Made by a program: the position numbers and the translations under genes. This document shows positions 22,979-49,886 of a DNA stretch of 64,000 nucleotides, piece by piece. Origin of the DNA: Saccostrea cucullata. Its lineage: Eukaryota. Where the stretch lies: positions 1 through 64,000 of the forward strand of contig NW_026921619.1 in the NCBI RefSeq assembly GCF_032062105.1. Direction: 5' to 3'. The notes under the pieces are model-generated. The model was not told the DNA's origin. It did not search any database and was given only the letters and a program-made list of their open reading frames with translations. Position 1 is the stretch's first letter; each line of letters opens with the position of its first letter.

Positions 22979-24646
22979 ATGAAATATATATATATGCATA
23001 AAAGAGGATCTATCTCGACAGAGCTACGACACTACCTTTTACCGACAGAAATTTCTTCCGGTAAACTACAGGCCAATCCAAAAGTACACAAGAAAAATCA
23101 CCCGCTGAGAACTATAGTAAATGGCCGTCAACATCCCACAGAAAAACTAGCAGAGTATGTTGAATTACAGCTCGAGGATGCAAACAAATCACTTAAAAGT
23201 TACATACAGGACACCACGGATTTCTTGAGGAAACTCTCAACATTGAATCAACCGTTGCCGAATTCTTCTTTATTATTTTGCATGGATGTTAAATCACTGT
23301 ATCCTAGTATACCAAGGAAGGAAGCAAGGGAAGTAATTAAAAGGATTCTAGAAGAACGACAGAAAAAAGAAGTAGATACTGACAGTATTCTAGAAATGAT
23401 GGATGCTGTCCTGGATAACAATAATTTTAGTTTCAACAATAAACATTATATCCAAACCGAAGGTACTGCTATAGGATCTAAACTGGGACGTAACTATGCA
23501 TGTGTATACATGGGGGAATGGGAAAATATTCTTTTGGCGATTTGTAAACAACAACCTCTTTTTTATCTAAGATACATTGACGATATTTTTGGGATCTGGA
23601 CGGGGACAGAAGAAGAACTACATGATTTCCATATGACTGCAAATAATATTCACCCCAACATTCAGCTTGACCTGCGTTTTTCAAAAACAAAAATAGACTT
23701 CCTTGATGTTTCTATTTCTCTGGATAACGGATTTCTCACAACAGATCTTTACAGCAAACCAACTGACAAACATATGTACCTTAACAAAACCTCCAGCCAT
23801 CCCGAATCTACAAAAAGTTCAATTCCGTACGGCCTTGGTCTTAGAGCACGTCGTATTTGCTCCACAGAGGAAAACTATCAAAGCCAACGTGATAAAGTGA
23901 AAAAGAACTTGCGAAAACGAGGATATTCTAGCAACGAAGTAGAAAAACAACTTACGAAAGTTGACAAACTCAATCGCTCGGATCTACTAAATTATAGAAA
24001 AAATAAAACGCGATGTGACCGTGTTCCCCTTGTGTTGACCTATTCAAAAGGATTACCGAATATTCATAACATTTTGAAGAAAAGACAAAAAATTCTTGAA
24101 AATTCCGATCGCCTGAAACTCGCGTTCAAAAAGACCCCAATCGTTGCCTATAAAAGAGACAAAAATTTGAAAGACATTTTAGTGTATAAAAAACACAACA
24201 ATTTATTTTTTAAAAAAGGAAATTTATGTGAGCCATGTGGTGCTAAAAAATGTATTTTGTGTAAATTTGTTGTGAAAACCAGCCAGTTTGAAGATAATAA
24301 CGGATGCACTTTTCAAGTCAAAAATTATATTAATTGTAAATCAAGGAATGTTGTTTATGGAATTTTTTGTAAAAAGTGTGACAAAATAGTGTATGTGGGA
24401 GAAACTGGTGATAGTTTATATCAAAGACATGTGTTGAATTTGTCTTTAATTAGAAGAGAAACAAATGATCCTGTGGCTACTCATTTTAATTCAGATGTAC
24501 ATACAGTAGAAGATTATAATATAATAGGCATTGAAAAACTGTATAAGAATGACATTTACCGCAAATATAGAGAAAATCTTTGGAAGAAAAAGTTGAACAC
24601 TTATATACCATTTGGTATTAACAAAAGGGAACACTTCTGTCTTTGA
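22979..24646 (+). pseudogene. 5'-truncated PLE ORF (RT + GIY-YIG only; lacks N-terminus, OTU and DKG)
   Basis: Matches the full ORF from MHKRGS onward; the leading MKYIY comes from flanking (TA)n. Confidence 0.85.
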
Positions 24647-24818
24647 ATTTGATTTATGAACATTTGTGTGACATTGTATACTTATTTTTACAGATATACT
24701 TTTATATATACTTTAAAATCATCTTTTTAATATACCCCGTATTCTAGTATTTTATTCTGTATGATAAAAATTTTGATACACAAGTACAATTTTTGCTCTC
24801 ACAATATTTTCAGATGTT

Positions 24819-24910
24819 TTTGGCGCAATTTTAGTGCATGACGTTGCCTCTCAATTTCTATGTTCATTGTGACGTCATAATACTGTTGAGTTGCTATGCA
24901 TTTAAATAAA
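24819..24910 (+). promoter_or_regulatory. Candidate pLTR promoter/poly(A) motifs (repeated in every unit)
   Basis: E2F-like TTTGGCGC (24819-24826), CRE palindrome TGACGTCA (24870-24877), TTTAAATAAA containing AATAAA (24905-24910) just 5' of the ribozyme; motif matches only. Confidence 0.35.
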
Positions 24911-24960
24911 CACGACTGATGAAGGCCGGTGACACGGCTGAAATATTTCGAAAAGTGTTT
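24908..24960 (+). ncRNA. Minimal type-I hammerhead ribozyme (unit 1)
   Basis: Core CTGATGA (24916-24922) ... GAAA (24940-24943); stem II GGCCG/CGGCT with loop GTGACA; stem I CGA/TCG plus AAACA/TGTTT; palindromic stem III region GAAATATTTC. Confidence 0.75.
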
Positions 24961-25023
24961 TAAAGTTTTTTATTGTATTGACAAAAAGAGACTTTGGATT
25001 TGTATAAAGTGTAGCAGAACAAC

Positions 25024-28000
25024 ATGACCAGCGTGCAAAAGAACGAATTGAGAATTTTGCGTAAAACATTTTTGAAGAAAACCAGATATGAGAGCCACCA
25101 ATTATTCTTACAATCTTGCTTGGAACGTAACATTATTCCAAAAGGATTTAAACTTAAATGGACTTTAGGTTTGGATGCAACAATTGACAACAAAGAAAAT
25201 ATTCATGGAATCCTGGACTCAACTTCCCGAAAATTAATGCAGGAATCCGTAAAGGTTTGTGTTAAAACTGTTTCAAAACTTAAAGAATCTATAGAAAAGC
25301 AGAGTGAAAGTCTAAGGACGAAACTTGGCGAGGAGGAGTATATAGAGGCTTTTTCATCTATCAATGCCAATGTAGAAAAAAACGCAGAGAAACTTTTCAG
25401 AACAAAGAGTAGGAAACTAGGTGCATTAAATGAAAACAGGAATAAAAAAGATAATGTTGTATCTACTTTGACCGTAAACCCCACAGTTGACAATGCAATC
25501 ATAGTTGATGAAGATGTAGAAATTCGAATAGAGGGGGATGGGAACTGTTTCTATAGATGCGTCTCATATTATTTATTTGATGATCAGAAATTTCATACTG
25601 AAATAAGAAGAAAGGTTGTAGAAGAACTGAATGCAAATAAACAATTTTATAGTGAGTACGTAGACGGAGATTTTCAAGATCATTTGAACAATGTCAAACT
25701 ATTGGACGGAAGTGTGGCTTCATGGGCAACAGAAGCAGAAGTGTTTGCAGCAGCATACCGATTTGATGTTGATATTTTTGTGAAATCAAATTCAAATAAC
25801 CGATCCCAATGGCAAAAGTACCCGAATGCGGAGGAATGCGATCATAAAAAAGATTTCATTTGTTTAAATTACTTCTCAAATCATTTTAATTTCATCAAAA
25901 CCTCACATCGCCCGTGCAATTGCTTTGTATCTAATTCTGAAGCAACAGATGATCTATTATCGGAAGATTCTAAAATGCACAACGTGGATTCGGAGGAAAA
26001 GGATGAGAACAATGAAACTATGGTAATGCCTGATAATAGTACATGTTCAGATAAGGATGTGATCAATATGTCTTCAAAAAAACTAACAAACGCGCAGTTA
26101 AGCTTACTTAAAAAAGGACTAAAATTTGTACCTACTAAAAAGAATATTGATTTCACACAGTTATTAACAGACCTGCAAACATGGGAACGTAGAATGCGAC
26201 TGCGGGAATTCTTTTTTAATGAGGAAGATGACGAATCTTCAGATACAGATGAACAGTATGAGAAAAAGAAATCAAATTCAAAGTGGACACCAGAAGAGGG
26301 GAGGGACAAATGGCTTGATGAATACATTAGACAAGTTAAGGAAGATGTAATCAGGGGATTAAGTAGAAATTTTTCGAGCAATATTACAAACTCAGAGGAA
26401 AGTGCTATGAGAGAGCTTCTAGAGGATCCAAATATTATCATTAGACCAGCAGACAAAGGATCAGGAGTCGTTGTTATGGATACAGATAAATACGTTGATC
26501 AAGTGGAAAACGAAATGCTGAATAGCTCATCCTACAGTGAAGTAAAAGAAGACAGATCTCAACAAATAACTAACAAAATACAAAAGTTAGTGAATAACAT
26601 GCATAAAAGAGGATCTATCTCGACAGAGCTACGACACTACCTTTTACCGACAGAAATTTCTTCCGGTAAACTACAGGCCAATCCAAAAGTACACAAGAAA
26701 AATCACCCGCTGAGAACTATAGTAAATGGCCGTCAACATCCCACAGAAAAACTAGCAGAGTATGTTGAATTACAGCTCGAGGATGCAAACAAATCACTTA
26801 AAAGTTACATACAGGACACCACGGATTTCTTGAGGAAACTCTCAACATTGAATCAACCGTTGCCGAATTCTTCTTTATTATTTTGCATGGATGTTAAATC
26901 ACTGTATCCTAGTATACCAAGGAAGGAAGCAAGGGAAGTAATTAAAAGGATTCTAGAAGAACGACAGAAAAAAGAAGTAGATACTGACAGTATTCTAGAA
27001 ATGATGGATGCTGTCCTGGATAACAATAATTTTAGTTTCAACAATAAACATTATATCCAAACCGAAGGTACTGCTATAGGATCTAAACTGGGACGAAACT
27101 ATGCATGTGTATACATGGGGGAATGGGAAAATATTCTTTTGGCGATTTGTAAACAACAACCTCTTTTTTATCTAAGATACATTGACGATATTTTTGGGAT
27201 CTGGACGGGGACAGAAGAAGAACTACATGATTTCCATATGACTGCAAATAATATTCACCCCAACATTCAGCTTGACCTGCGTTTTTCAAAAACAAAAATA
27301 GACTTCCTTGATGTTTCTATTTCTCTGGATAACGGATTTCTCACAACAGATCTTTACAGCAAACCAACTGACAAACATATGTACCTTAACAAAACCTCCA
27401 GCCATCCCGAATCTACAAAAAGTTCAATTCCGTACGGCCTTGGTCTTAGAGCACGTCGTATTTGCTCCACAGAGGAAAACTATCAAAGCCAACGTGATAA
27501 AGTGAAAAAGAACTTGCGAAAACGAGGATATTCTAGCAACGAAGTAGAAAAACAACTTACGAAAGTTGACAAACTCAATCGCTCGGATCTACTAAATTAT
27601 AGAAAAAATAAAACGCGATGTGACCGTGTTCCCCTTGTGTTGACCTATTCAAAAGGATTACCGAATATTCATAACATTTTGAAGAAAAGACAAAAAATTC
27701 TTGAAAATTCCGATCGCCTGAAACTCGCGTTCAAAAAGACCCCAATCGTTGCCTATAAAAGAGACAAAAATTTGAAAGACATTTTAGTGTATAAAAAACA
27801 CAACAATTTATTTTTTAAAAAAGGAAATTTATGTGAGCCATGTGGTGCTAAAAAATGTATTTTGTGTAAATTTGTTGTGAAAACCAGCCAGTTTGAAGAT
27901 AATAACGGATGCACTTTTCAAGTCAAAAATTATATTAATTGTAAATCAAGGAATGTTGTTTATGGAATTTTTTGTAAAAAGTGTGACAAAATAGTGTATG

Positions 28001-28251
28001 TGGGAGAAACTGGTGATAGTTTATATCAAAGACATGTGTTGAATTTGTCTTTAATTAGAAGAGAAACAAATGATCCTGTGGCTACTCATTTTAATTCAGA
28101 TGTACATACAGTAGAAGATTATAATATAATAGGCATTGAAAAACTGTATAAGAATGACATTTACCGCAAATATAGAGAAAATCTTTGGAAGAAAAAGTTG
28201 AACACTTATATACCATTTGGTATTAACAAAAGGGAACACTTCTGTCTTTGA
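25024..28251 (+). CDS. PLE polyprotein: N-terminal PLE motif, OTU protease, DKG, RT, Cys-rich linker, GIY-YIG endonuclease (1075 aa)
   Basis: HQLFLQSC...IIPKG; GDGNCFYR...WATEAE...NHFN; IRPADKGSGVVVMD; DVKSLYPSI, GTAIGS, RYIDD; CEPC...CILC; VVYGIFCKKC...YVGETG...R...E...GIN. Confidence 0.95.
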   Translation: MTSVQKNELRILRKTFLKKTRYESHQLFLQSCLERNIIPKGFKLKWTLGLDATIDNKENIHGILDSTSRKLMQESVKVCVKTVSKLKESIEKQSESLRTKLGEEEYIEAFSSINANVEKNAEKLFRTKSRKLGALNENRNKKDNVVSTLTVNPTVDNAIIVDEDVEIRIEGDGNCFYRCVSYYLFDDQKFHTEIRRKVVEELNANKQFYSEYVDGDFQDHLNNVKLLDGSVASWATEAEVFAAAYRFDVDIFVKSNSNNRSQWQKYPNAEECDHKKDFICLNYFSNHFNFIKTSHRPCNCFVSNSEATDDLLSEDSKMHNVDSEEKDENNETMVMPDNSTCSDKDVINMSSKKLTNAQLSLLKKGLKFVPTKKNIDFTQLLTDLQTWERRMRLREFFFNEEDDESSDTDEQYEKKKSNSKWTPEEGRDKWLDEYIRQVKEDVIRGLSRNFSSNITNSEESAMRELLEDPNIIIRPADKGSGVVVMDTDKYVDQVENEMLNSSSYSEVKEDRSQQITNKIQKLVNNMHKRGSISTELRHYLLPTEISSGKLQANPKVHKKNHPLRTIVNGRQHPTEKLAEYVELQLEDANKSLKSYIQDTTDFLRKLSTLNQPLPNSSLLFCMDVKSLYPSIPRKEAREVIKRILEERQKKEVDTDSILEMMDAVLDNNNFSFNNKHYIQTEGTAIGSKLGRNYACVYMGEWENILLAICKQQPLFYLRYIDDIFGIWTGTEEELHDFHMTANNIHPNIQLDLRFSKTKIDFLDVSISLDNGFLTTDLYSKPTDKHMYLNKTSSHPESTKSSIPYGLGLRARRICSTEENYQSQRDKVKKNLRKRGYSSNEVEKQLTKVDKLNRSDLLNYRKNKTRCDRVPLVLTYSKGLPNIHNILKKRQKILENSDRLKLAFKKTPIVAYKRDKNLKDILVYKKHNNLFFKKGNLCEPCGAKKCILCKFVVKTSQFEDNNGCTFQVKNYINCKSRNVVYGIFCKKCDKIVYVGETGDSLYQRHVLNLSLIRRETNDPVATHFNSDVHTVEDYNIIGIEKLYKNDIYRKYRENLWKKKLNTYIPFGINKREHFCL

Positions 28252-28512
28252 ATTGGATTTATGAACATTTGTGTGACATTGTATACTTATTTTTACAGAT
28301 ATACTTTTATATATACTTTAAAATCATCTTTTTAATATACCCCGTATTCTAGTATTTTATTCTGTATGATAAAAATTTTGATACACAAGTACAATTTTTG
28401 CTCTCACAATATTTTCAGATGTTTTTGGCGCAATTTTAGTGCATGACGTTGCCTCTCAATTTCTATGTTCATTCTGACGTCATAATACTGTTGAGTTGCT
28501 ATGCATTTAAAT

Positions 28513-28565
28513 AAACACGACTGATGAAGGCCGGTGACACGGCTGAAATATTTCGAAAAGTGTTT
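28513..28565 (+). ncRNA. Minimal hammerhead ribozyme (unit 2)
   Basis: Same sequence as 24908-24960; CTGATGA at 28521. Confidence 0.75.
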
Positions 28566-28628
28566 TAAAGTTTTTTATTGTATTGACAAAAAGAGACTTT
28601 GGATTTGTATAAAGTGTAGCAGAACAAC

Positions 28629-31600
28629 ATGACCAGCGTGCAAAAGAACGAATTGAGAATTTTGCGTAAAACATTTTTGAAGAAAACCAGATATGAGAGC
28701 CACCAATTATTCTTACAATCTTGCTTGGAACGTAACATTATTCCAAAAGGATTTAAACTTAAATGGACTTTAGGTTTGGATGCAACAATTGACAACAAAG
28801 AAAATATTCATGGAATCCTGGACTCAACTTCCCGAAAATTAATGCAGGAATCCGTAAAGGTTTGTGTTAAAACTGTTTCAAAACTTAAAGAATCTATAGA
28901 AAAGCAGAGTGAAAGTCTAAGGACGAAACTTGGCGAGGAGGAGTATATAGAGGCTTTTTCATCTATCAATGCCAATGTAGAAAAAAACGCAGAGAAACTT
29001 TTCAGAACAAAGAGTAGGAAACTAGGTGCATTAAATGAAAACAGGAATAAAAAAGATAATGTTGTATCTACTTTGACCGTAAACCCCACAGTTGACAATG
29101 CAATCATAGTTGATGAAGATGTAGAAATTCGAATAGAGGGGGATGGGAACTGTTTCTATAGATGCGTCTCATATTATTTATTTGATGATCAGAAATTTCA
29201 TACTGAAATAAGAAGAAAGGTTGTAGAAGAACTGAATGCAAATAAACAATTTTATAGTGAGTACGTAGACGGAGATTTTCAAGATCATTTGAACAATGTC
29301 AAACTATTGGACGGAAGTGTGGCTTCATGGGCAACAGAAGCAGAAGTGTTTGCAGCAGCATACCGATTTGATGTTGATATTTTTGTGAAATCAAATTCAA
29401 ATAACCGATCCCAATGGCAAAAGTACCCGAATGCGGAGGAATGCGATCATAAAAAAGATTTCATTTGTTTAAATTACTTCTCAAATCATTTTAATTTCAT
29501 CAAAACCTCACATCGCCCGTGCAATTGCTTTGTATCTAATTCTGAAGCAACAGATGATCTATTATCGGAAGATTCTAAAATGCACAACGTGGATTCGGAG
29601 GAAAAGGATGAGAACAATGAAACTATGGTAATGCCTGATAATAGTACATGTTCAGATAAGGATGTGATCAATATGTCTTCAAAAAAACTAACAAACGCGC
29701 AGTTAAGCTTACTTAAAAAAGGACTAAAATTTGTACCTACTAAAAAGAATATTGATTTCACACAGTTATTAACAGACCTGCAAACATGGGAACGTAGAAT
29801 GCGACTGCGGGAATTCTTTTTTAATGAGGAAGATGACGAATCTTCAGATACAGATGAACAGTATGAGAAAAAGAAATCAAATTCAAAGTGGACACCAGAA
29901 GAGGGGAGGGACAAATGGCTTGATGAATACATTAGACAAGTTAAGGAAGATGTAATCAGGGGATTAAGTAGAAATTTTTCGAGCAATATTACAAACTCAG
30001 AGGAAAGTGCTATGAGAGAGCTTCTAGAGGATCCAAATATTATCATTAGACCAGCAGACAAAGGATCAGGAGTCGTTGTTATGGATACAGATAAATACGT
30101 TGATCAAGTGGAAAACGAAATGCTGAATAGCTCATCCTACAGTGAAGTAAAAGAAGACAGATCTCAACAAATAACTAACAAAATACAAAAGTTAGTGAAT
30201 AACATGCATAAAAGAGGATCTATCTCGACAGAGCTACGACACTACCTTTTACCGACAGAAATTTCTTCCGGTAAACTACAGGCCAATCCAAAAGTACACA
30301 AGAAAAATCACCCGCTGAGAACTATAGTAAATGGCCGTCAACATCCCACAGAAAAACTAGCAGAGTATGTTGAATTACAGCTCGAGGATGCAAACAAATC
30401 ACTTAAAAGTTACATACAGGACACCACGGATTTCTTGAGGAAACTCTCAACATTGAATCAACCGTTGCCGAATTCTTCTTTATTATTTTGCATGGATGTT
30501 AAATCACTGTATCCTAGTATACCAAGGAAGGAAGCAAGGGAAGTAATTAAAAGGATTCTAGAAGAACGACAGAAAAAAGAAGTAGATACTGACAGTATTC
30601 TAGAAATGATGGATGCTGTCCTGGATAACAATAATTTTAGTTTCAACAATAAACATTATATCCAAACCGAAGGTACTGCTATAGGATCTAAACTGGGACG
30701 AAACTATGCATGTGTATACATGGGGGAATGGGAAAATATTCTTTTGGCGATTTGTAAACAACAACCTCTTTTTTATCTAAGATACATTGACGATATTTTT
30801 GGGATCTGGACGGGGACAGAAGAAGAACTACATGATTTCCATATGACTGCAAATAATATTCACCCCAACATTCAGCTTGACCTGCGTTTTTCAAAAACAA
30901 AAATAGACTTCCTTGATGTTTCTATTTCTCTGGATAACGGATTTCTCACAACAGATCTTTACAGCAAACCAACTGACAAACATATGTACCTTAACAAAAC
31001 CTCCAGCCATCCCGAATCTACAAAAAGTTCAATTCCGTACGGCCTTGGTCTTAGAGCACGTCGTATTTGCTCCACAGAGGAAAACTATCAAAGCCAACGT
31101 GATAAAGTGAAAAAGAACTTGCGAAAACGAGGATATTCTAGCAACGAAGTAGAAAAACAACTTACGAAAGTTGACAAACTCAATCGCTCGGATCTACTAA
31201 ATTATAGAAAAAATAAAACGCGATGTGACCGTGTTCCCCTTGTGTTGACCTATTCAAAAGGATTACCGAATATTCATAACATTTTGAAGAAAAGACAAAA
31301 AATTCTTGAAAATTCCGATCGCCTGAAACTCGCGTTCAAAAAGACCCCAATCGTTGCCTATAAAAGAGACAAAAATTTGAAAGACATTTTAGTGTATAAA
31401 AAACACAACAATTTATTTTTTAAAAAAGGAAATTTATGTGAGCCATGTGGTGCTAAAAAATGTATTTTGTGTAAATTTGTTGTGAAAACCAGCCAGTTTG
31501 AAGATAATAACGGATGCACTTTTCAAGTCAAAAATTATATTAATTGTAAATCAAGGAATGTTGTTTATGGAATTTTTTGTAAAAAGTGTGACAAAATAGT

Positions 31601-31856
31601 GTATGTGGGAGAAACTGGTGATAGTTTATATCAAAGACATGTGTTGAATTTGTCTTTAATTAGAAGAGAAACAAATGATCCTGTGGCTACTCATTTTAAT
31701 TCAGATGTACATACAGTAGAAGATTATAATATAATAGGCATTGAAAAACTGTATAAGAATGACATTTACCGCAAATATAGAGAAAATCTTTGGAAGAAAA
31801 AGTTGAACACTTATATACCATTTGGTATTAACAAAAGGGAACACTTCTGTCTTTGA
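28629..31856 (+). CDS. PLE OTU-RT-GIY-YIG polyprotein, intact copy
   Basis: Same protein as 25024-28251. Confidence 0.95.
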   Translation: MTSVQKNELRILRKTFLKKTRYESHQLFLQSCLERNIIPKGFKLKWTLGLDATIDNKENIHGILDSTSRKLMQESVKVCVKTVSKLKESIEKQSESLRTKLGEEEYIEAFSSINANVEKNAEKLFRTKSRKLGALNENRNKKDNVVSTLTVNPTVDNAIIVDEDVEIRIEGDGNCFYRCVSYYLFDDQKFHTEIRRKVVEELNANKQFYSEYVDGDFQDHLNNVKLLDGSVASWATEAEVFAAAYRFDVDIFVKSNSNNRSQWQKYPNAEECDHKKDFICLNYFSNHFNFIKTSHRPCNCFVSNSEATDDLLSEDSKMHNVDSEEKDENNETMVMPDNSTCSDKDVINMSSKKLTNAQLSLLKKGLKFVPTKKNIDFTQLLTDLQTWERRMRLREFFFNEEDDESSDTDEQYEKKKSNSKWTPEEGRDKWLDEYIRQVKEDVIRGLSRNFSSNITNSEESAMRELLEDPNIIIRPADKGSGVVVMDTDKYVDQVENEMLNSSSYSEVKEDRSQQITNKIQKLVNNMHKRGSISTELRHYLLPTEISSGKLQANPKVHKKNHPLRTIVNGRQHPTEKLAEYVELQLEDANKSLKSYIQDTTDFLRKLSTLNQPLPNSSLLFCMDVKSLYPSIPRKEAREVIKRILEERQKKEVDTDSILEMMDAVLDNNNFSFNNKHYIQTEGTAIGSKLGRNYACVYMGEWENILLAICKQQPLFYLRYIDDIFGIWTGTEEELHDFHMTANNIHPNIQLDLRFSKTKIDFLDVSISLDNGFLTTDLYSKPTDKHMYLNKTSSHPESTKSSIPYGLGLRARRICSTEENYQSQRDKVKKNLRKRGYSSNEVEKQLTKVDKLNRSDLLNYRKNKTRCDRVPLVLTYSKGLPNIHNILKKRQKILENSDRLKLAFKKTPIVAYKRDKNLKDILVYKKHNNLFFKKGNLCEPCGAKKCILCKFVVKTSQFEDNNGCTFQVKNYINCKSRNVVYGIFCKKCDKIVYVGETGDSLYQRHVLNLSLIRRETNDPVATHFNSDVHTVEDYNIIGIEKLYKNDIYRKYRENLWKKKLNTYIPFGINKREHFCL

Positions 31857-32117
31857 ATTGGATTTATGAACATTTGTGTGACATTGTATACTTATTTTTA
31901 CAGATATACTTTTATATATACTTTAAAATCATCTTTTTAATATACCCCGTATTCTAGTATTTTATTCTGTATGATAAAAATTTTGATACACAAGTACAAT
32001 TTTTGCTCTCACAATATTTTCAGATGTTTTTGGCGCAATTTTAGTGCATGACGTTGCCTCTCAATTTCTATGTTCATTGTGACGTCATAATACTGTTGAG
32101 TTGCTATGCATTTAAAT

Positions 32118-32170
32118 AAACACGACTGATGAAGGCCGGTGACACGGCTGAAATATTTCGAAAAGTGTTT
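32118..32170 (+). ncRNA. Minimal hammerhead ribozyme (unit 3)
   Basis: CTGATGA at 32126, same motif. Confidence 0.75.
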
Positions 32171-32233
32171 TAAAGTTTTTTATTGTATTGACAAAAAGAG
32201 ACTTTGGATTTGTATAAAGTGTAGCAGAACAAC

Positions 32234-35722: not shown

Positions 35723-35775
35723 AAACACGACTGATGAAGGCCGGTGACACGGCTGAAATATTTCGAAAAGTGTTT
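35723..35775 (+). ncRNA. Minimal hammerhead ribozyme (unit 4)
   Basis: CTGATGA at 35731. Confidence 0.75.
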
Positions 35776-39327: not shown

Positions 39328-39380
39328 AAACACGACTGATGAAGGCCGGTGACACGGCTGAAATATTTCGAAAAGTGTTT
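39328..39380 (+). ncRNA. Minimal hammerhead ribozyme (unit 5)
   Basis: CTGATGA at 39336. Confidence 0.75.
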
Positions 39381-39443
39381 TAAAGTTTTTTATTGTATTG
39401 ACAAAAAGAGACTTTGGATTTGTATAAAGTGTAGCAGAACAAC

Positions 39444-42400: not shown

Positions 42401-42671
42401 GTGTGACAAAATAGTGTATGTGGGAGAAACTGGTGATAGTTTATATCAAAGACATGTGTTGAATTTGTCTTTAATTATAAGAGAAACAAATGATCCTGTG
42501 GCTACTCATTTTAATTCAGATGTACATACAGTAGAAGATTATAATATAATAGGCATTGAAAAACTGTATAAGAATGACATTTACCGCAAATATAGAGAAA
42601 ATCTTTGGAAGAAAAAGTTGAACACTTATATACCATTTGGTATTAACAAAAGGGAACACTTCTGTCTTTGA
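39444..42671 (+). CDS. PLE OTU-RT-GIY-YIG polyprotein, intact copy (G133S; LIRRE to LIIRE)
   Basis: 1075 aa. Confidence 0.95.
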   Translation: MTSVQKNELRILRKTFLKKTRYESHQLFLQSCLERNIIPKGFKLKWTLGLDATIDNKENIHGILDSTSRKLMQESVKVCVKTVSKLKESIEKQSESLRTKLGEEEYIEAFSSINANVEKNAEKLFRTKSRKLSALNENRNKKDNVVSTLTVNPTVDNAIIVDEDVEIRIEGDGNCFYRCVSYYLFDDQKFHTEIRRKVVEELNANKQFYSEYVDGDFQDHLNNVKLLDGSVASWATEAEVFAAAYRFDVDIFVKSNSNNRSQWQKYPNAEECDHKKDFICLNYFSNHFNFIKTSHRPCNCFVSNSEATDDLLSEDSKMHNVDSEEKDENNETMVMPDNSTCSDKDVINMSSKKLTNAQLSLLKKGLKFVPTKKNIDFTQLLTDLQTWERRMRLREFFFNEEDDESSDTDEQYEKKKSNSKWTPEEGRDKWLDEYIRQVKEDVIRGLSRNFSSNITNSEESAMRELLEDPNIIIRPADKGSGVVVMDTDKYVDQVENEMLNSSSYSEVKEDRSQQITNKIQKLVNNMHKRGSISTELRHYLLPTEISSGKLQANPKVHKKNHPLRTIVNGRQHPTEKLAEYVELQLEDANKSLKSYIQDTTDFLRKLSTLNQPLPNSSLLFCMDVKSLYPSIPRKEAREVIKRILEERQKKEVDTDSILEMMDAVLDNNNFSFNNKHYIQTEGTAIGSKLGRNYACVYMGEWENILLAICKQQPLFYLRYIDDIFGIWTGTEEELHDFHMTANNIHPNIQLDLRFSKTKIDFLDVSISLDNGFLTTDLYSKPTDKHMYLNKTSSHPESTKSSIPYGLGLRARRICSTEENYQSQRDKVKKNLRKRGYSSNEVEKQLTKVDKLNRSDLLNYRKNKTRCDRVPLVLTYSKGLPNIHNILKKRQKILENSDRLKLAFKKTPIVAYKRDKNLKDILVYKKHNNLFFKKGNLCEPCGAKKCILCKFVVKTSQFEDNNGCTFQVKNYINCKSRNVVYGIFCKKCDKIVYVGETGDSLYQRHVLNLSLIIRETNDPVATHFNSDVHTVEDYNIIGIEKLYKNDIYRKYRENLWKKKLNTYIPFGINKREHFCL

Positions 42672-42932
42672 ATTGGATTTATGAACATTTGTGTGACATT
42701 GTATACTTATTTTTACAGATATACTTTTATATATACTTTAAAATCATCTTTTTAATATACCCCGTATTCTAGTATTTTATTCTGTATGATAAAAATTTTG
42801 ATACACAAGTACAATTTTTGCTCTCACAATATTTTCAGATGTTTTTGGCGCAATTTTAGTGCATGACGTTGCCTCTCAATTTCTATGTTCATTGTGACGT
42901 CATAATACTGTTGAGTTGCTATGCATTTAAAT

Positions 42933-42985
42933 AAACACGACTGATGAAGGCCGGTGACACGGCTGAAATATTTCGAAAAGTGTTT
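42933..42985 (+). ncRNA. Minimal hammerhead ribozyme (unit 6)
   Basis: CTGATGA at 42941. Confidence 0.75.
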
Positions 42986-43048
42986 TAAAGTTTTTTATTG
43001 TATTGACAAAAAGAGACTTTGGATTTGTATAAAGTGTAGCAGAACAAC

Positions 43049-46000
43049 ATGACCAGCGTGCAAAAGAACGAATTGAGAATTTTGCGTAAAACATTTTTGA
43101 AGAAAACCAGATATGAGAGCCACCAATTATTCTTACAATCTTGCTTGGAACGTAACATTATTCCAAAAGGATTTAAACTTAAATGGACTTTAGGTTTGGA
43201 TGCAACAATTGACAACAAAGAAAATATTCATGGAATCCTGGACTCAACTTCCCGAAAATTAATGCAGGAATCCGTAAAGGTTTGTGTTAAAACTGTTTCA
43301 AAACTTAAAGAATCTATAGAAAAGCAGAGTGAAAGTCTAAGGACGAAACTTGGCGAGGAGGAGTATATAGAGGCTTTTTCATCTATCAATGCCAATGTAG
43401 AAAAAAACGCAGAGAAACTTTTCAGAACAAAGAGTAGGAAACTAGGTGCATTAAATGAAAACAGGAATAAAAAAGATAATGTTGTATCTACTTTGACCGT
43501 AAACCCCACAGTTGACAATGCAATCATAGTTGATGAAGATGTAGAAATTCGAATAGAGGGGGATGGGAACTGTTTCTATAGATGCGTCTCATATTATTTA
43601 TTTGATGATCAGAAATTTCATACTGAAATAAGAAGAAAGGTTGTAGAAGAACTGAATGCAAATAAACAATTTTATAGTGAGTACGTAGACGGAGATTTTC
43701 AAGATCATTTGAACAATGTCAAACTATTGGACGGAAGTGTGGCTTCATGGGCAACAGAAGCAGAAGTGTTTGCAGCAGCATACCGATTTGATGTTGATAT
43801 TTTTGTGAAATCAAATTCAAATAACCGATCCCAATGGCAAAAGTACCCGAATGCGGAGGAATGCGATCATAAAAAAGATTTCATTTGTTTAAATTACTTC
43901 TCAAATCATTTTAATTTCATCAAAACCTCACATCGCCCGTGCAATTGCTTTGTATCTAATTCTGAAGCAACAGATGATCTATTATCGGAAGATTCTAAAA
44001 TGCACAACGTGGATTCGGAGGAAAAGGATGAGAACAATGAAACTATGGTAATGCCTGATAATAGTACATGTTCAGATAAGGATGTGATCAATATGTCTTC
44101 AAAAAAACTAACAAACGCGCAGTTAAGCTTACTTAAAAAAGGACTAAAATTTGTACCTACTAAAAAGAATATTGATTTCACACAGTTATTAACAGACCTG
44201 CAAACATGGGAACGTAGAATGCGACTGCGGGAATTCTTTTTTAATGAGGAAGATGACGAATCTTCAGATACAGATGAACAGTATGAGAAAAAGAAATCAA
44301 ATTCAAAGTGGACACCAGAAGAGGGGAGGGACAAATGGCTTGATGAATACATTAGACAAGTTAAGGAAGATGTAATCAGGGGATTAAGTAGAAATTTTTC
44401 GAGCAATATTACAAACTCAGAGGAAAGTGCTATGAGAGAGCTTCTAGAGGATCCAAAACTTATCATTAGACCAGCAGACAAAGGATCAGGAGTCGTTGTT
44501 ATGGATACAAATAAATACGTTGATCAAGTGGAAAACGAAATGCTGAATAGCTCATCCTACAGTGAAGTAAAAGAAGACAGATCTCAACAAATAACTAACA
44601 AAATACAAAAGTTAGTGAATAACATGCATAAAAGAGGATCTATCTCGACAGAGCTACGACACTACCTTTTACCGACAGAAATTTCTTCCGGTAAACTACA
44701 GGCCAATCCAAAAGTACACAAGAAAAATCACCCGCTGAGAACTATAGTAAATGGCCGTCAACATCCCACAGAAAAACTAGCAGAGTATGTTGAATTACAG
44801 CTCGAGGATGCAAACAAATCACTTAAAAGTTACATACAGGACACCACGGATTTCTTGAGGAAACTCTCAACATTGAATCAACCGTTGCCGAATTCTTCTT
44901 TATTATTTTGCATGGATGTTAAATCACTGTATCCTAGTATACCAAGGAAGGAAGCAAGGGAAGTAATTAAAAGGATTCTAGAAGAACGACAGAAAAAAGA
45001 AGTAGATACTGACAGTATTCTAGAAATGATGGATGCTGTCCTGGATAACAATAATTTTAGTTTCAACAATAAACATTATATCCAAACCGAAGGTACTGCT
45101 ATAGGATCTAAACTGGGACGAAACTATGCATGTGTATACATGGGGGAATGGGAAAATATTCTTTTGGCGATTTGTAAACAACAACCTCTTTTTTATCTAA
45201 GATACATTGACGATATTTTTGGGATCTGGACGGGGACAGAAGAAGAACTACATGATTTCCATATGACTGCAAATAATATTCACCCCAACATTCAGCTTGA
45301 CCTGCGTTTTTCAAAAACAAAAATAGACTTCCTTGATGTTTCTATTTCTCTGGATAACGGGTTTCTCACAACAGATCTTTACAGCAAACCAACTGACAAA
45401 CATATGTACCTTAACAAAACCTCCAGCCATCCCGAATCTACAAAAAGTTCAATTCCGTACGGCCTTGGTCTTAGAGCACGTCGTATTTGCTCCACAGAGG
45501 AAAACTATCAAAGCCAACGTGATAAAGTGAAAAAGAACTTGCGAAAACGAGGATATTCTAGCAACGAAGTAGAAAAACAACTTACGAAAGTTGACAAACT
45601 CAATCGCTCGGATCTACTAAATTATAGAAAAAATAAAACGCGATGTGACCGTGTTCCCCTTGTGTTGACCTATTCAAAAGGATTACCGAATATTCATAAC
45701 ATTTTGAAGAAAAGACAAAAAATTCTTGAAAATTCCGATCGCCTGAAACTCGCGTTCAAAAAGACCCCAATCGTTGCCTATAAAAGAGACAAAAATTTGA
45801 AAGACATTTTAGTGTATAAAAAACACAACAATTTATTTTTTAAAAAAGGAAATTTATGTGAGCCATGTGGTGCTAAAAAATGTATTTTGTGTAAATTTGT
45901 TGTGAAAACCAGCCAGTTTGAAGATAATAACGGATGCACTTTTCAAGTCAAAAATTATATTAATTGTAAATCAAGGAATGTTGTTTATGGAATTTTTTGT

Positions 46001-46276
46001 AAAAAGTGTGACAAAATAGTGTATGTGGGAGAAACTGGTGATAGTTTATATCAAAGACATGTGTTGAATTTGTCTTTAATTAGAAGAGAAACAAATGATC
46101 CTGTGGCTACTCATTTTAATTCAGATGTACATACAGTAGAAGATTATAATATAATAGGCATTGAAAAACTGTATAAGAATGACATTTACCGCAAATATAG
46201 AGAAAATCTTTGGAAGAAAAAGTTGAACACTTATATACCATTTGGTATTAACAAAAGGGAACACTTCTGTCTTTGA
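43049..46276 (+). CDS. PLE OTU-RT-GIY-YIG polyprotein, intact copy (PNII to PKLI; DTDK to DTNK)
   Basis: 1075 aa. Confidence 0.95.
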   Translation: MTSVQKNELRILRKTFLKKTRYESHQLFLQSCLERNIIPKGFKLKWTLGLDATIDNKENIHGILDSTSRKLMQESVKVCVKTVSKLKESIEKQSESLRTKLGEEEYIEAFSSINANVEKNAEKLFRTKSRKLGALNENRNKKDNVVSTLTVNPTVDNAIIVDEDVEIRIEGDGNCFYRCVSYYLFDDQKFHTEIRRKVVEELNANKQFYSEYVDGDFQDHLNNVKLLDGSVASWATEAEVFAAAYRFDVDIFVKSNSNNRSQWQKYPNAEECDHKKDFICLNYFSNHFNFIKTSHRPCNCFVSNSEATDDLLSEDSKMHNVDSEEKDENNETMVMPDNSTCSDKDVINMSSKKLTNAQLSLLKKGLKFVPTKKNIDFTQLLTDLQTWERRMRLREFFFNEEDDESSDTDEQYEKKKSNSKWTPEEGRDKWLDEYIRQVKEDVIRGLSRNFSSNITNSEESAMRELLEDPKLIIRPADKGSGVVVMDTNKYVDQVENEMLNSSSYSEVKEDRSQQITNKIQKLVNNMHKRGSISTELRHYLLPTEISSGKLQANPKVHKKNHPLRTIVNGRQHPTEKLAEYVELQLEDANKSLKSYIQDTTDFLRKLSTLNQPLPNSSLLFCMDVKSLYPSIPRKEAREVIKRILEERQKKEVDTDSILEMMDAVLDNNNFSFNNKHYIQTEGTAIGSKLGRNYACVYMGEWENILLAICKQQPLFYLRYIDDIFGIWTGTEEELHDFHMTANNIHPNIQLDLRFSKTKIDFLDVSISLDNGFLTTDLYSKPTDKHMYLNKTSSHPESTKSSIPYGLGLRARRICSTEENYQSQRDKVKKNLRKRGYSSNEVEKQLTKVDKLNRSDLLNYRKNKTRCDRVPLVLTYSKGLPNIHNILKKRQKILENSDRLKLAFKKTPIVAYKRDKNLKDILVYKKHNNLFFKKGNLCEPCGAKKCILCKFVVKTSQFEDNNGCTFQVKNYINCKSRNVVYGIFCKKCDKIVYVGETGDSLYQRHVLNLSLIRRETNDPVATHFNSDVHTVEDYNIIGIEKLYKNDIYRKYRENLWKKKLNTYIPFGINKREHFCL

Positions 46277-46537
46277 ATTGGATTTATGAACATTTGTGTG
46301 ACATTGTATATTTATTTTTACAGATATACTTTTATATATACTTTAAAATCATCTTTTTAATATACCCCGTATTCTAGTATTTTATTCTGTATGATAAAAA
46401 TTTTGATACACAAGTACAATTTTTGCTCTCACAATATTTTCAGATGTTTTTGGCGCAATTTTAGTGCATGACGTTGCCTCTCAATTTCTATGTTCATTGT
46501 GACGTCATAATACTGTTGAGTTGCTATGCATTTAAAT

Positions 46538-46590
46538 AAACACGACTGATGAAGGCCGGTGACACGGCTGAAATATTTCGAAAAGTGTTT
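46538..46590 (+). ncRNA. Minimal hammerhead ribozyme (unit 7)
   Basis: CTGATGA at 46546. Confidence 0.75.
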
Positions 46591-46653
46591 TAAAGTTTTT
46601 TATTGTATTGACAAAAAGAGACTTTGGATTTGTATAAAGTGTAGCAGAACAAC

Positions 46654-49590
46654 ATGACCAGCGTGCAAAAGAACGAATTGAGAATTTTGCGTAAAACATT
46701 TTTGAAGAAAACCAGATATGAGAGCCACCAATTATTCTTACAATCTTGCTTGGAACGTAACATTATTCCAAAAGGATTTAAACTTAAATGGACTTTAGGT
46801 TTGGATGCAACAATTGACAACAAAGAAAATATTCATGGAATCCTGGACTCAACTTCCCGAAAATTAATGCAGGAATCCGTAAAGGTTTGTGTTAAAACTG
46901 TTTCAAAACTTAAAGAATCTATAGAAAAGCAGAGTGAAAGTCTAAGGACGAAACTTGGCGAGGAGGAGTATATAGAGGCTTTTTCATCTATCAATGCCAA
47001 TGTAGAAAAAAACGCAGAGAAACTTTTCAGAACAAAGAGTAGGAAACTAGGTGCATTAAATGAAAACAGGAATAAAAAAGATAATGTTGTATCTACTTTG
47101 ACCGTAAACCCCACAGTTGACAATGCAATCATAGTTGATGAAGATGTAGAAATTCGAATAGAGGGGGATGGGAACTGTTTCTATAGATGCGTCTCATATT
47201 ATTTATTTGATGATCAGAAATTTCATACTGAAATAAGAAGAAAGGTTGTAGAAGAACTGAATGCAAATAAACAATTTTATAGTGAGTACGTAGACGGAGA
47301 TTTTCAAGATCATTTGAACAATGTCAAACTATTGGACGGAAGTGTGGCTTCATGGGCAACAGAAGCAGAAGTGTTTGCAGCAGCATACCGATTTGATGTT
47401 GATATTTTTGTAAAATCAAATTCAAATAACCGATCCCAATGGCAAAAGTACCCGAATGCGGAGGAATGCGATCATAAAAAAGATTTCATTTGTTTAAATT
47501 ACTTCTCAAATCATTTTAATTTCATCAAAACCTCACATCGCCCGTGCAATTGCTTTGTATCTAATTCTGAAGCAACAGATGATCTATTATCGGAAGATTC
47601 TAAAATGCACAACGTGGATTCGGAGGAAAAGGATGAGAACAATGAAACTATGGTAATGCCTGATAATAGTACATGTTCAGATAAGGATGTGATCAATATG
47701 TCTTCAAAAAAACTAACAAACGCGCAGTTAAGCTTACTTAAAAAAGGACTAAAATTTGTACCTACTAAAAAGAATATTGATTTCACACAGTTATTAACAG
47801 ACCTGCAAACATGGGAACGTAGAATGCGACTGCGGGAATTCTTTTTTAATGAGGAAGATGACGAATCTTCAGATACAGATGAACAGTATGAGAAAAAGAA
47901 ATCAAATTCAAAGTGGACACCAGAAGAGGGGAGGGACAAATGGCTTGATGAATACATTAGACAAGTTAAGGAAGATGTAATCAGGGGATTAAGTAGAAAT
48001 TTTTCGAGCAATATTACAAACTCAGAGGAAAGTGCTATGAGAGAGCTTCTAGAGGATCCAAATATTATCATTAGACCAGCAGACAAAGGATCAGGAGTCG
48101 TTGTTATGGATACAGATAAATACGTTGATCAAGTGGAAAACGAAATGCTGAATAGCTCATCCTACAGTGAAGTAAAAGAAGACAGATCTCAACAAATAAC
48201 TAACAAAATACAAAAGTTAGTGAATAACATGCATAAAAGAGGATCTATCTCGACAGAGCTACGACACTACCTTTTACCGACAGAAATTTCTTCCGGTAAA
48301 CTACAGGCCAATCCAAAAGTACACAAGAAAAATCACCCGCTGAGAACTATAGTAAATGGCCGTCAACATCCCACAGAAAAACTAGCAGAGTATGTTGAAT
48401 TACAGCTCGAGGATGCAAACAAATCACTTAAAAGTTACATACAGGACACCACGGATTTCTTGAGGAAACTCTCAACATTGAATCAACCGTTGCCGAATTC
48501 TTCTTTATTATTTTGCATGGATGTTAAATCACTGTATCCTAGTATACCAAGGAAGGAAGCAAGGGAAGTAATTAAAAGGATTCTAGAAGAACGACAGAAA
48601 AAAGAAGTAGATACTGACAGTATTCTAGAAATGATGGATGCTGTCCTGGATAACAATAATTTTAGTTTCAACAATAAACATTATATCCAAACCGAAGGTA
48701 CTGCTATAGGATCTAAACTGGGACGAAACTATGCATGTGTATACATGGGGGAATGGGAAAATATTCTTTTGGCGATTTGTAAACAACAACCTCTTTTTTA
48801 TCTAAGATACATTGACGATATTTTTGGGATCTGGACGGGGACAGAAGAAGAACTACATGATTTCCATATGACTGCAAATAATATTCACCCCAACATTCAG
48901 CTTGACCTGCGTTTTTCAAAAACAAAAATAGACTTCCTTGATGTTTCTATTTCTCTGGATAACGGGTTTCTCACAACAGATCTTTACAGCAAACCAACTG
49001 ACAAACATATGTACCTTAACAAAACCTCCAGCCATCCCGAATCTACAAAAAGTTCAATTCCGTACGGCCTTGGTCTTAGAGCACGTCGTATTTGCTCCAC
49101 AGAGGAAAACTATCAAAGCCAACGTGATAAAGTGAAAAAGAACTTGCGAAAACGAGGATATTCTAGCAACGAAGTAGAAAAACAACTTACGAAAGTTGAC
49201 AAACTCAATCGCTCGGATCTACTAAATTATAGAAAAAATAAAACGCGATGTGACCGTGTTCCCCTTGTGTTGACCTATTCAAAAGGATTACCGAATATTC
49301 ATAACATTTTGAAGAAAAGACAAAAAATTCTTGAAAATTCCGATCGCCTGAAACTCGCGTTCAAAAAGACCCCAATCGTTGCCTATAAAAGAGACAAAAA
49401 TTTGAAAGACATTTTAGTGTATAAAAAACACAACAATTTATTTTTTAAAAAAGGAAATTTATGTGAGCCATGTGGTGCTAAAAAATGTATTTTGTGTAAA
49501 TTTGTTGTGAAAACCAGCCAGTTTGAAGATAATAACGGATGCACTTTTCAAGTCAAAAATTATACAGATATACTTTTATATATACTTTAA
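46654..49590 (+). CDS. PLE polyprotein lacking GIY-YIG (361-bp internal deletion), 978 aa
   Basis: Junction ...aaaaattata|cagatatact at 49564/49565 removes the equivalent of 27935-28295. Confidence 0.85.
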   Translation: MTSVQKNELRILRKTFLKKTRYESHQLFLQSCLERNIIPKGFKLKWTLGLDATIDNKENIHGILDSTSRKLMQESVKVCVKTVSKLKESIEKQSESLRTKLGEEEYIEAFSSINANVEKNAEKLFRTKSRKLGALNENRNKKDNVVSTLTVNPTVDNAIIVDEDVEIRIEGDGNCFYRCVSYYLFDDQKFHTEIRRKVVEELNANKQFYSEYVDGDFQDHLNNVKLLDGSVASWATEAEVFAAAYRFDVDIFVKSNSNNRSQWQKYPNAEECDHKKDFICLNYFSNHFNFIKTSHRPCNCFVSNSEATDDLLSEDSKMHNVDSEEKDENNETMVMPDNSTCSDKDVINMSSKKLTNAQLSLLKKGLKFVPTKKNIDFTQLLTDLQTWERRMRLREFFFNEEDDESSDTDEQYEKKKSNSKWTPEEGRDKWLDEYIRQVKEDVIRGLSRNFSSNITNSEESAMRELLEDPNIIIRPADKGSGVVVMDTDKYVDQVENEMLNSSSYSEVKEDRSQQITNKIQKLVNNMHKRGSISTELRHYLLPTEISSGKLQANPKVHKKNHPLRTIVNGRQHPTEKLAEYVELQLEDANKSLKSYIQDTTDFLRKLSTLNQPLPNSSLLFCMDVKSLYPSIPRKEAREVIKRILEERQKKEVDTDSILEMMDAVLDNNNFSFNNKHYIQTEGTAIGSKLGRNYACVYMGEWENILLAICKQQPLFYLRYIDDIFGIWTGTEEELHDFHMTANNIHPNIQLDLRFSKTKIDFLDVSISLDNGFLTTDLYSKPTDKHMYLNKTSSHPESTKSSIPYGLGLRARRICSTEENYQSQRDKVKKNLRKRGYSSNEVEKQLTKVDKLNRSDLLNYRKNKTRCDRVPLVLTYSKGLPNIHNILKKRQKILENSDRLKLAFKKTPIVAYKRDKNLKDILVYKKHNNLFFKKGNLCEPCGAKKCILCKFVVKTSQFEDNNGCTFQVKNYTDILLYIL

Positions 49591-49781
49591 AATCATCTTT
49601 TTAATATACCCCGTATTCTAGTATTTTATTCTGTATGATAAAAATTTTGATACACAAGTACAATTTTTGCTCTCACAATATTTTCAGATGTTTTTGGCGC
49701 AATTTTAGTGCATGACGTTGCCTCTCAATTTCTATGTTCATTGTGACGTCATAATACTGTTGAGTTGCTATGCATTTAAAT

Positions 49782-49834
49782 AAACACGACTGATGAAGGC
49801 CGGTGACACGGCTGAAATATTTCGAAAAGTGTTT
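49782..49834 (+). ncRNA. Minimal hammerhead ribozyme (terminal unit)
   Basis: CTGATGA at 49790. Confidence 0.75.
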
Positions 49835-49886
49835 TAAAGTTTTTTATTGTATTGACAAAAAGAGACTTTGGAGTCTGGTCTGACTA

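What the first reader, a model, noticed from the sequence alone, without database searches (positions are those of the whole stretch)
22994..49872. 27-kb head-to-tail PLE concatemer with six intact ORFs: rolling-circle retrotransposition or megasatellite
Seen: an exact 3605-bp period with no spacer or TSD between units, very few differences among copies, a 5'-truncated first unit, and a right end ~50 nt past the last ribozyme cleavage site. Established: PLEs usually insert as partial tandems (about 1-2 units) that create pseudo-LTRs, and hammerhead-containing retrozymes make circular RNAs. Inference: one ribozyme per unit could cut read-through transcripts into 3605-nt monomers that circularise; continuous reverse transcription round the circle would give this polarised array. 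The alternative is DNA-level unequal crossing-over.
Basis: partly seen in the sequence, partly recalled or inferred. Interest (0 to 1): 0.8.

Follow-up and report, generated by a model that had tools for sequence, protein, structure and literature searches.

The report
Tandem array of a Penelope-like retroelement
An oyster contig carries about 7.4 near-identical head-to-tail copies of a Penelope-like retrotransposon, and right beside it six tandem copies of an unrelated gypsy retrotransposon, so both arrays were most likely built by ordinary DNA-level unequal recombination, not by a ribozyme-driven rolling-circle copying mechanism.

Summary
From 22994 to 49872 there is a gap-free 3605-bp period with 12 variable columns, six intact 1075-aa ORFs, a 5'-truncated first unit and a canonical 3' end.

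The unit is an endonuclease-bearing Penelope-like element: OTU, RT and GIY-YIG in one ORF, a minimal hammerhead in the UTR, and a (TA)n target.

The rolling-circle reading is disfavoured, for five reasons:
- The same contig holds a second array 660 bp away: a Ty3/gypsy element, period 7878 bp, six units sharing LTRs, with no ribozyme. All six units carry a MITE that dispersed copies lack.
- Both arrays show shared derived variants, and edge units keep ancestral states. This is not the star-like pattern expected from one template.
- No other locus in the 1.17-Gb genome holds more than about 1.2 units of this family.
- The family's 5'-truncation profile makes a 27-kb cDNA extremely unlikely.
- The circular-RNA idea was already published in 2014.

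Best explanation: an ordinary 1.56-unit insertion that expanded in place by unequal exchange. Copy number could not be checked, because no raw DNA reads were available and N runs sit close to both ends of the array. This is a new member of a known kind, of moderate-to-low interest.

The parts
22984..22993 (.). (TA)n tract directly left of the array; the family's usual target
   Evidence: Sequence. Other copies of the family abut (TA)n at their 3' ends.
22994..25001 (+). First unit, 5'-truncated (element nt 1598-3605). It serves as the pseudo-LTR and seed repeat.
25002..46631 (+). Six full 3605-bp units. Each has an intact 1075-aa ORF (OTU, RT, GIY-YIG), with ATG at 25024 plus multiples of 3605.
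46632..49564 (+). Last unit, element nt 1-2933. Its ORF is cut to 978 aa by the deletion.
49565..49872 (+). Element nt 3295-3602, following the 361-bp deletion. It ends at the canonical 3' end, including the 25-nt 'tail'.
28510..28570 (+). Minimal type-I hammerhead motif: CUGAUGA, a bulged A, a 5-bp helix II, GAAA, a palindromic AUAU helix III, and predicted cleavage after 28552. It recurs once per unit, with CUGAUGA at 24916, 28521, 32126, 35731, 39336, 42941, 46546 and 49790.
   Evidence: Descriptor search gave 8 hits against 0.005 expected. Two related families keep the same architecture, with compensatory pairs. Rfam found nothing.
22479..22663 (.). N run 330 bp left of the array (an assembly gap or a mask; not filled)
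49887..50030 (.). N run 14 bp right of the array (an assembly gap or a mask; not filled)
50537..64000 (+). Start of a second tandem array: a Ty3/gypsy LTR element, period 7878 bp, organised as LTR-(internal-LTR)x6. It continues to contig position 98077, beyond the window.
50952..51364 (.). 413-bp MITE inside the gypsy unit. It is present in all six units (next copy at 58830-59242) and absent from dispersed copies.

Best explanation
The array is a real, young tandem array ('megasatellite') of an endonuclease-bearing Penelope-like element.

Proposed sequence of events (inferred):
- One ordinary target-primed insertion into a (TA)n tract produced the usual PLE partial tandem: a 5'-truncated copy (nt 1598-3605) followed by a full copy, about 1.56 units.
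- The roughly 2 kb of direct repeat then misaligned during recombination or replication (unequal sister-chromatid exchange).
- Each such event added or removed whole 3605-bp units, which keeps the truncated left end and the canonical right end in place.

The neighbouring gypsy array grew in the same way from its two LTRs. The hammerhead motif is a normal feature of the element and is not needed to explain the array.

Shown here: the array anatomy, the PLE identity, the second array, the variant partitions, and the absence of other multimers. Inferred: the recombination mechanism and the order of events.
For: 1. A second array of an unrelated, ribozyme-less retroelement lies 660 bp away on the same 100.7-kb contig. 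It has a 7878-bp period, runs from 50537 to 98077, and is built as LTR-(internal-LTR)x6. Within-array diversity is about the same in both: PLE 8.9e-4, gypsy 7e-4 to 1.2e-3.

2. All six gypsy units carry a 413-bp MITE that no dispersed copy has. The nearest dispersed copy is only 97-98% identical. The units were therefore copied locally, from one DNA copy.

3. The variants are not star-like.
- PLE: two derived variants are shared by adjacent units (nt 419 in units 4 and 5; nt 2335 in units 6 and 7). At nt 781 the edge unit keeps the ancestral base while units 1-6 share the derived one.
- Gypsy: the derived groups are nested (units 1,2; 3,5; 4,6), and the edge unit keeps four ancestral states.

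4. All 14 genome-wide hits to the PLE 5' end were scored: 7 in this array, 5 at other loci (C1241 twice, C9580, C23030, C10220) and 2 short fragments. No locus outside the array holds more than about 1.2 units.

5. All units share the 13 differences that separate the array from the nearest copy (0.25-0.36% divergence to C2153 and C1241, against about 0.09% between units), so the array had one founder.

6. Of 48 3'-anchored copies, 25 reach 1 kb, 7 reach 2 kb and 3 reach 3.6 kb. Extrapolated, a 27-kb cDNA has a probability of about 2e-10.

7. TE dimers expanding into arrays by unequal exchange is an established model (PMC5932611).
Against: - No read-level confirmation of copy number was possible.
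- N runs sit close to both ends of the PLE array.
- No allelic contig or empty site was found.
- Shared variants could also come from gene conversion after a multi-unit birth, so a multimeric origin followed by DNA-level turnover is not excluded.
- The right flank lacks the (TA)n seen at other copies.
- No clean target-site duplication was seen for either array.
Confidence: 0.55

Rival explanations
1. Single-event, more-than-unit reverse transcription. Either hammerhead-cleaved unit RNA circularises and the PLE RT runs about 7.4 times round it, or the RT copies a very long read-through multimeric RNA. Both would give the whole array in one insertion.
For: - The ends are polarised: a 5' truncation on the left and the canonical 3' end 51 nt past the predicted cleavage site on the right.
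- There is one conserved hammerhead motif per unit.
- The units are very similar to each other.
- The hypothesis is published (PMC4209133), and internal RT initiation on multi-copy RNA has been shown for an Anolis PLE (PMC11167929).
Against: - It cannot explain the adjacent gypsy array.
- Shared derived variants, and an edge unit with the ancestral state, contradict a single template.
- There is no other multimer in the genome and no source array.
- The truncation profile makes 27 kb of cDNA about 2e-10 likely.
- Polarised ends are equally expected after in-situ expansion.
- Two oligo-dT RNA runs show no reads over the 5' 1.6 kb and no pile-up of read ends at the ribozyme site. Those animals lack the exact sequence, so this is weak evidence.
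- Hammerhead cleavage was not needed for PLE insertion in vitro (PMC11167929).
Confidence: 0.12
2. Stepwise self-homing. Transcripts of the array are re-inserted by the element's own RT and endonuclease into the pseudo-LTR junction of the same locus, adding one unit at a time.
For: An Anolis PLE cleaves and primes at its own ORF-pLTR junction in vitro (PMC11167929). This route would also produce variants shared between units.
Against: - All seven junctions are seamless and identical, with no truncations, tails or filler.
- This family targets (TA)n, not its own junction.
- It does not explain the gypsy array.
Confidence: 0.08
3. Assembly artefact. The true locus holds far fewer units, and the assembler or a gap filler looped through the repeat cycle created by the pLTR or LTRs.
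For: - N runs lie 330 bp and 14 bp from the array ends.
- Two arrays sit on one repeat-only contig.
- None of the 20 public runs holds the exact full-length sequence.
- The exact ORF is not on record elsewhere.
Against: - Apart from unit 2, which matches the array majority at every variable site, every PLE unit carries its own variant combination. Several variants are shared in nested, evolution-like patterns in both arrays, which looping through a collapsed repeat would not create.
- There are no indels over 74 kb of arrays.
- Known long-read artefacts give inverted joins, not direct ones (from general knowledge).
Confidence: 0.2

Closest known systems
Canonical EN+ Penelope-like element insertions (pseudo-LTR partial tandems, inverted 5'-truncated partners, 'tail'; PMC8557442, PMC11167929)
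   Same: [quoted passage not shown]
   Different: This locus has 7.4 units where 1-2 is usual, no inverted partner on the contig, and an N-terminal OTU domain.
TE-derived tandem arrays grown by unequal exchange from a tandem dimer (McGurk and Barbash 2018, PMC5932611), and LTR-element arrays with shared LTRs (e.g. PMC7215508)
   Same: Whole-element units, a seed direct repeat, nested variants shared between units, divergent edge units, and a neighbouring LTR-(internal-LTR)n array.
   Different: Here the seed dimer is produced by the PLE insertion mechanism itself and does not need a double insertion. The ORFs are still intact.
Retrozymes and hammerhead circRNA elements, and the circular-RNA model for PLE tandems (PMC4209133, PMC7229834, bioRxiv 10.64898/2026.07.22.740005)
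   Same: One type-I, probably dimer-dependent hammerhead per tandem unit.
   Different: The unit is 3.6 kb and protein-coding, against 170-1000 nt and non-coding. No circular RNA, no multimers at other loci, and non-star variation.

Membership tests
Penelope-like element (EN+) | PLE-type reverse transcriptase | tested here: met
   Pfam RVT_1 does not hit the ORF directly. The YIDD motif is visible in the translation. Relatives found at E values of 1e-99 to 1e-153 carry RVT_1. The closest relatives carry DUF8422 and HTH_animal.
Penelope-like element (EN+) | C-terminal GIY-YIG endonuclease | tested here: met
   GIY...YVGETG motif near the C-terminus. P0062, which is 44% identical, has Pfam GIY-YIG at residues 964-1049.
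Penelope-like element (EN+) | Partial-tandem pseudo-LTRs, inverted 5'-truncated partners, frequent 5' truncation | tested here: met
   Other loci of the family: C1241, C9580, C2153, C10186 and C11720. A Pinctada relative shows the same structure.
Penelope-like element (EN+) | 'Tail' extension at one end, and microsatellite target bias | tested here: met
   The 3' ends fall at about nt 3577 or at nt 3602 (a 25-nt tail), nearly always abutting (TA)n.
Penelope-like element (EN+) | Hammerhead ribozyme in the pLTR | tested here: inconclusive
   A motif with all core nucleotides occurs once per unit: 8 hits against 0.005 expected. I wrote the descriptor after seeing the sequence. Helices I and II are kept, with compensatory changes, in two related families. 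No Rfam model matches. Catalysis was not tested.
Penelope-like element (EN+) | Clade assignment (Neptune, Penelope/Poseidon or Nematis) | not tested
Rolling-circle / more-than-unit RT product (retrozyme-like) | Independent multimeric insertions at several loci | tested here: not met
   All 14 genome hits to the 5' 800 bp were scored. No locus other than this one has more than about 1.2 units.
Rolling-circle / more-than-unit RT product (retrozyme-like) | Units identical at birth, so only private (star-like) differences | tested here: not met
   Two doubletons shared by adjacent units, and one site where the derived state is shared by six units while the edge unit stays ancestral.
Rolling-circle / more-than-unit RT product (retrozyme-like) | Unit-length or circular RNA with ends at the ribozyme site | tested here: inconclusive
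   Two oligo-dT RNA runs show low coverage on both strands over the 3' 2 kb only, and no pile-up of read ends. DNA contigs from the same species label also lack the array's exact 5' sequence, and poly(A) selection would miss RNA circles.
TE-derived tandem array by unequal exchange | A pre-existing direct repeat that can misalign | tested here: met
   A 2008-bp truncated first unit for the PLE, and LTRs of about 270 bp for the gypsy element.
TE-derived tandem array by unequal exchange | Nested shared derived variants; edge units more divergent or ancestral | tested here: met
   PLE. Gypsy, including an alternating pattern (units 3,5 and 4,6) that implies a two-unit duplication step.
TE-derived tandem array by unequal exchange | Whole-unit copy-number polymorphism between individuals | not testable with these tools
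   DNA runs were available only as Logan contigs.

The most novel reading that the evidence does not exclude
The 27-kb array was born in one retrotransposition event. Hammerhead-processed, circularised 3.6-kb PLE RNA was copied about 7.4 times round by the element's RT, and only later lightly reshuffled by gene conversion. The neighbouring gypsy array would then be a coincidence of a recombination-prone region.
Probability: 0.1. Interest if true: 0.8.

Novelty: new member of a known kind. Interest (0 to 1): 0.35.

Why it matters
If the copy number is real, this is a clear example of how a PLE's built-in partial tandem can turn an active, ORF-intact retroelement into a nascent megasatellite. 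An LTR element doing the same thing next door serves as an internal control.

The locus also bears on a question open since 2014: do PLE hammerheads drive tandem formation through circular RNA? Here the evidence says they do not have to.

The practical value is modest. The locus marks a recombination-prone, repeat-only region, and a family with six intact OTU-RT-GIY-YIG ORFs that could be cloned for PLE biochemistry.

Tried and rejected
- Rfam, on the whole region and on 200 nt at E<=10, found no hammerhead. I assessed the motif with my own descriptor and by comparison with relatives.
- Pfam on ORF segments found only OTU.
- Reads: DNA runs are Logan contigs only, so they give neither copy number nor a flank junction. 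The left flank is a very high-copy SINE.
- RNA raw reads were uninformative for this array.
- Searches for an allelic or empty-site contig with the left, middle and right flanks found only dispersed repeats.
- The exact ORF is not on record in other assemblies.
- The UTR of a Pinctada relative is unalignable and has no strict hammerhead motif, and neither does L050.
- Reintegration of eccDNA or of a rolling-circle DNA concatemer was rejected. Both arrays end exactly at element termini (the PLE 3' end, and LTR TG...CA ends), not at arbitrary points in the unit.
- In one search a per-column majority across the six PLE ORFs was used only as a yardstick to list differences. It was neither printed nor saved.

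Full report
**Observation.** A lag-3605 self-comparison shows uninterrupted identity from 22994 to 49564, which is 7.37 units. There are 12 variable columns and no indels. ORF listing gives six intact 1075-aa frames at 3605-bp steps. There is also an in-frame truncated first frame and a 978-aa last frame.

At 49564/49565 a 361-bp deletion with TA microhomology removes element nt 2934-3294. The sequence then resumes and runs to nt 3602. Element numbering takes window 28607 as nt 1. On that scale the ATG is at nt 23, the stop at nt 3250, and the hammerhead core at nt 3520.

Two N runs lie 330 bp left and 14 bp right of the array. I left them as they are.

**What the unit is.** Pfam recognises only an OTU cysteine-protease domain, at residues 171-286. 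The translation also shows an RT YIDD box and a C-terminal GIY...YVGETG motif.

A word-index protein search found 188 relatives. The closest are 45-60% identical, and the named ones among them come from bivalves (Pinctada, Mercenaria). They have the architecture OTU (or JAB/MPN) plus DUF8422 plus HTH_animal. More distant relatives, at E values of 1e-99 to 1e-153, carry Pfam RVT_1 and GIY-YIG.

Other copies in the same 1.17-Gb genome show the textbook PLE anatomy described by Craig et al. 2021 (PMC8557442):
- heavy 5' truncation;
- 1.2-unit partial tandems (C9580, C1241);
- head-to-head inverted pairs (C1241, C2153, C10186, C11720);
- two classes of 3' end, differing by a 25-nt 'tail';
- almost invariable abutment on (TA)n.

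A Pinctada relative has the same arrangement of an inverted copy, a truncated copy and a full copy. The unit is therefore an EN+ Penelope-like element.

**The ribozyme.** Rfam finds no hammerhead, even at E<=10 on 200 nt. The UTR nevertheless holds every core nucleotide in the published minimal-PLE layout (PMC4209133):
- helix I, then CUGAUGA and a bulged A;
- a 5-bp helix II, then GAAA;
- a palindromic AUAU in place of helix III;
- a U, with predicted cleavage after window 28552.

A descriptor for this layout hits eight times on the 100.7-kb contig. All hits are on the sense strand, one per PLE unit, and there are none elsewhere. Shuffled sequence gives 0.005 hits. I wrote the descriptor after seeing the sequence, so this figure is not an unbiased test.

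Two related families (57% and 48% protein identity) carry the same architecture in their UTRs, one of them also about 107 nt upstream of its ATG. RNAalifold recovers helices I and II, with two compensatory pairs. Two other relatives showed no strict motif. The motif is credible. Its catalysis is untested.

**The decisive context.** I searched the right flank against the genome to look for an empty site. That search showed that the Ty3/gypsy element downstream (gag, protease-RT-RNase H-integrase) is itself tandem. It recurs every 7878 bp on the same contig.

With the rest of the contig fetched, this second array runs from 50537 to 98077 as LTR-(internal-LTR)x6, again without a single indel. Three quarters of this 100.7-kb, repeat-only contig therefore consists of two adjacent arrays of unrelated retroelements.

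Within-array diversity is about equal: PLE 8.9e-4, gypsy 7e-4 to 1.2e-3. The gypsy element has no ribozyme. All six of its units carry a 413-bp MITE that every dispersed copy lacks, and the nearest dispersed copy is only 97-98% identical. These units were therefore copied locally from one DNA copy. A PLE-specific RNA mechanism cannot explain this array, and a shared DNA-level cause is the economical reading.

**Variant genealogy.** I polarised the PLE variants using the nearest dispersed copies, C1241 and C2153, which are 0.25-0.36% divergent.
- The array units share all the differences from those copies, so there was one founder.
- Six mutational events are derived and private to single units: five single-nucleotide changes and one three-site cluster in unit 6.
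- Two are derived and shared by adjacent units: nt 419 in units 4 and 5, and nt 2335 in units 6 and 7.
- At nt 781 the edge unit keeps the ancestral base while units 1-6 share the derived one.

The gypsy array is even clearer. It shows nested groups (units 1,2; 3,5; 4,6, the last two implying a two-unit duplication step), and an edge unit that keeps four ancestral states.

A single template copied repeatedly predicts a star pattern of private differences only. These patterns are instead what stepwise duplication and homogenisation of arrays produce. Six of the seven within-array ORF changes are non-synonymous, so there is no sign of selection on the units since the array formed.

**Other tests of the RT model.** All 14 genome-wide matches to the 5' 800 bp were scored. 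Seven are in this array, two in the C1241 inverted pair and one in C9580; two more are partial 5' ends (C23030, C10220) and two are short fragments. No other locus holds more than about 1.2 units, and no source array exists.

Among 48 3'-anchored copies, which are the longest of at least 214 candidates, 25 reach 1 kb, 7 reach 2 kb and 3 reach 3.6 kb. A simple exponential extrapolation gives about 2e-10 for a 27-kb cDNA. This is a rough figure and assumes the truncation depends on length.

Polarised ends do not discriminate between the models. Unequal exchange between the 2008-bp truncated first unit and the following unit adds whole units while keeping both ends in place. It would also rebuild intact ORFs from a 5'-truncated copy plus a 3'-deleted copy.

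**Reads.** Only Logan contigs were available for the DNA runs, so neither copy number nor the flank junction can be judged. Their contigs over the 5' half of the element differ by 2-3% from the window. Those animals therefore lack this exact sequence.

Two oligo-dT RNA runs give sparse coverage on both strands over the 3' 2 kb only. There is nothing over the 5' 1.6 kb and no pile-up of ends at the ribozyme site. This is weak negative evidence. The exact ORF is not on record elsewhere.

**Artefact risk.** The N runs beside the array, the repeat-only contig and the lack of independent reads keep an over-expanded assembly possible; I put it at about 0.2. Three things argue against it:
- apart from unit 2, which matches the array majority at every variable site, each PLE unit has its own variant combination;
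- several variants are shared in nested patterns in both arrays;
- there are no indels across 74 kb of arrays.

**Literature.** Craig et al. 2021 note that hammerhead-less PLEs form the same tandems (PMC8557442). The 2024 Anolis PLE study found internal initiation of reverse transcription on multi-copy RNA, and found that hammerhead cleavage was dispensable in vitro (PMC11167929). Growth of TE dimers into arrays by unequal exchange is established (PMC5932611).

**Verdict.** The unit is a PLE with a credible minimal hammerhead. The array is best explained as in-situ DNA-level expansion of an ordinary 1.56-unit insertion (0.55). The rivals are an assembly artefact (0.2), single-event multimeric or rolling-circle reverse transcription (0.12) and self-homing (0.08). 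This is a new member of a known kind.

Earlier scan notes on the same window (the hammerhead, the OTU domain) and on another piece of this genome ((TA)n-targeted PLE ends) agree with what I tested. Within the eight notes each look-up returned, none described a whole-retroelement array.

Noticed in passing
window 50537-64000, continuing to contig C3756 position 98077 (L044-L047): Six-unit tandem array of a Ty3/gypsy element with shared LTRs (period 7878 bp, no indels). Gag and pol are open in units 1-5, and pol has one stop in unit 6. The variant pattern implies a two-unit duplication step.
   Followed up: yes
window 50952-51364 and 58830-59242: 413-bp MITE with terminal inverted repeats of about 82 bp, sitting inside every gypsy unit. 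The same MITE occurs alone at more than 30 other loci, and dispersed gypsy copies lack it.
   Followed up: partly
window 25534-25881 (ORF residues 171-286): An OTU-like cysteine-protease (deubiquitinase-type) domain is fused N-terminally to the PLE RT. In the relatives found, the same position holds OTU, Otubain-like or JAB/MPN domains, so a deubiquitinase-type module seems to be a recurrent and exchangeable accessory in this marine-invertebrate PLE group. A full-text search for 'Penelope-like' together with 'OTU' returned no paper that appeared to describe such a fusion; only one of the four listed was opened.
   Followed up: partly
window 22664-22990: tRNA-like SINE at very high copy number. 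Its word depth in two DNA runs is 100 to 1000 times that of the PLE. It lies directly left of the array, between the N run and the (TA)n tract.
   Followed up: no
window 17100-18220 and 21062-22405: Two arrays of the same 36-bp satellite in opposite orientation bracket a 2.8-kb repeat. That repeat is present, with similar satellite flanks, at dozens of loci (87-93% identity). It is possibly a Helitron- or Helentron-type element carrying satellites.
   Followed up: no
window 50419-50533: A near-perfect 115-nt hairpin gave sub-threshold Rfam miRNA-family hits. It is most likely the inverted repeat of a MITE and not a miRNA gene.
   Followed up: no
G000 C7805, C21705, C606, C5029: A second PLE family, 37% identical in protein, has many intact ORFs of about 930 aa. 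It mostly occurs as head-to-head pairs, with one two-ORF tandem (spacing 3863 bp). No long arrays were seen among the 60 candidates scored.
   Followed up: no
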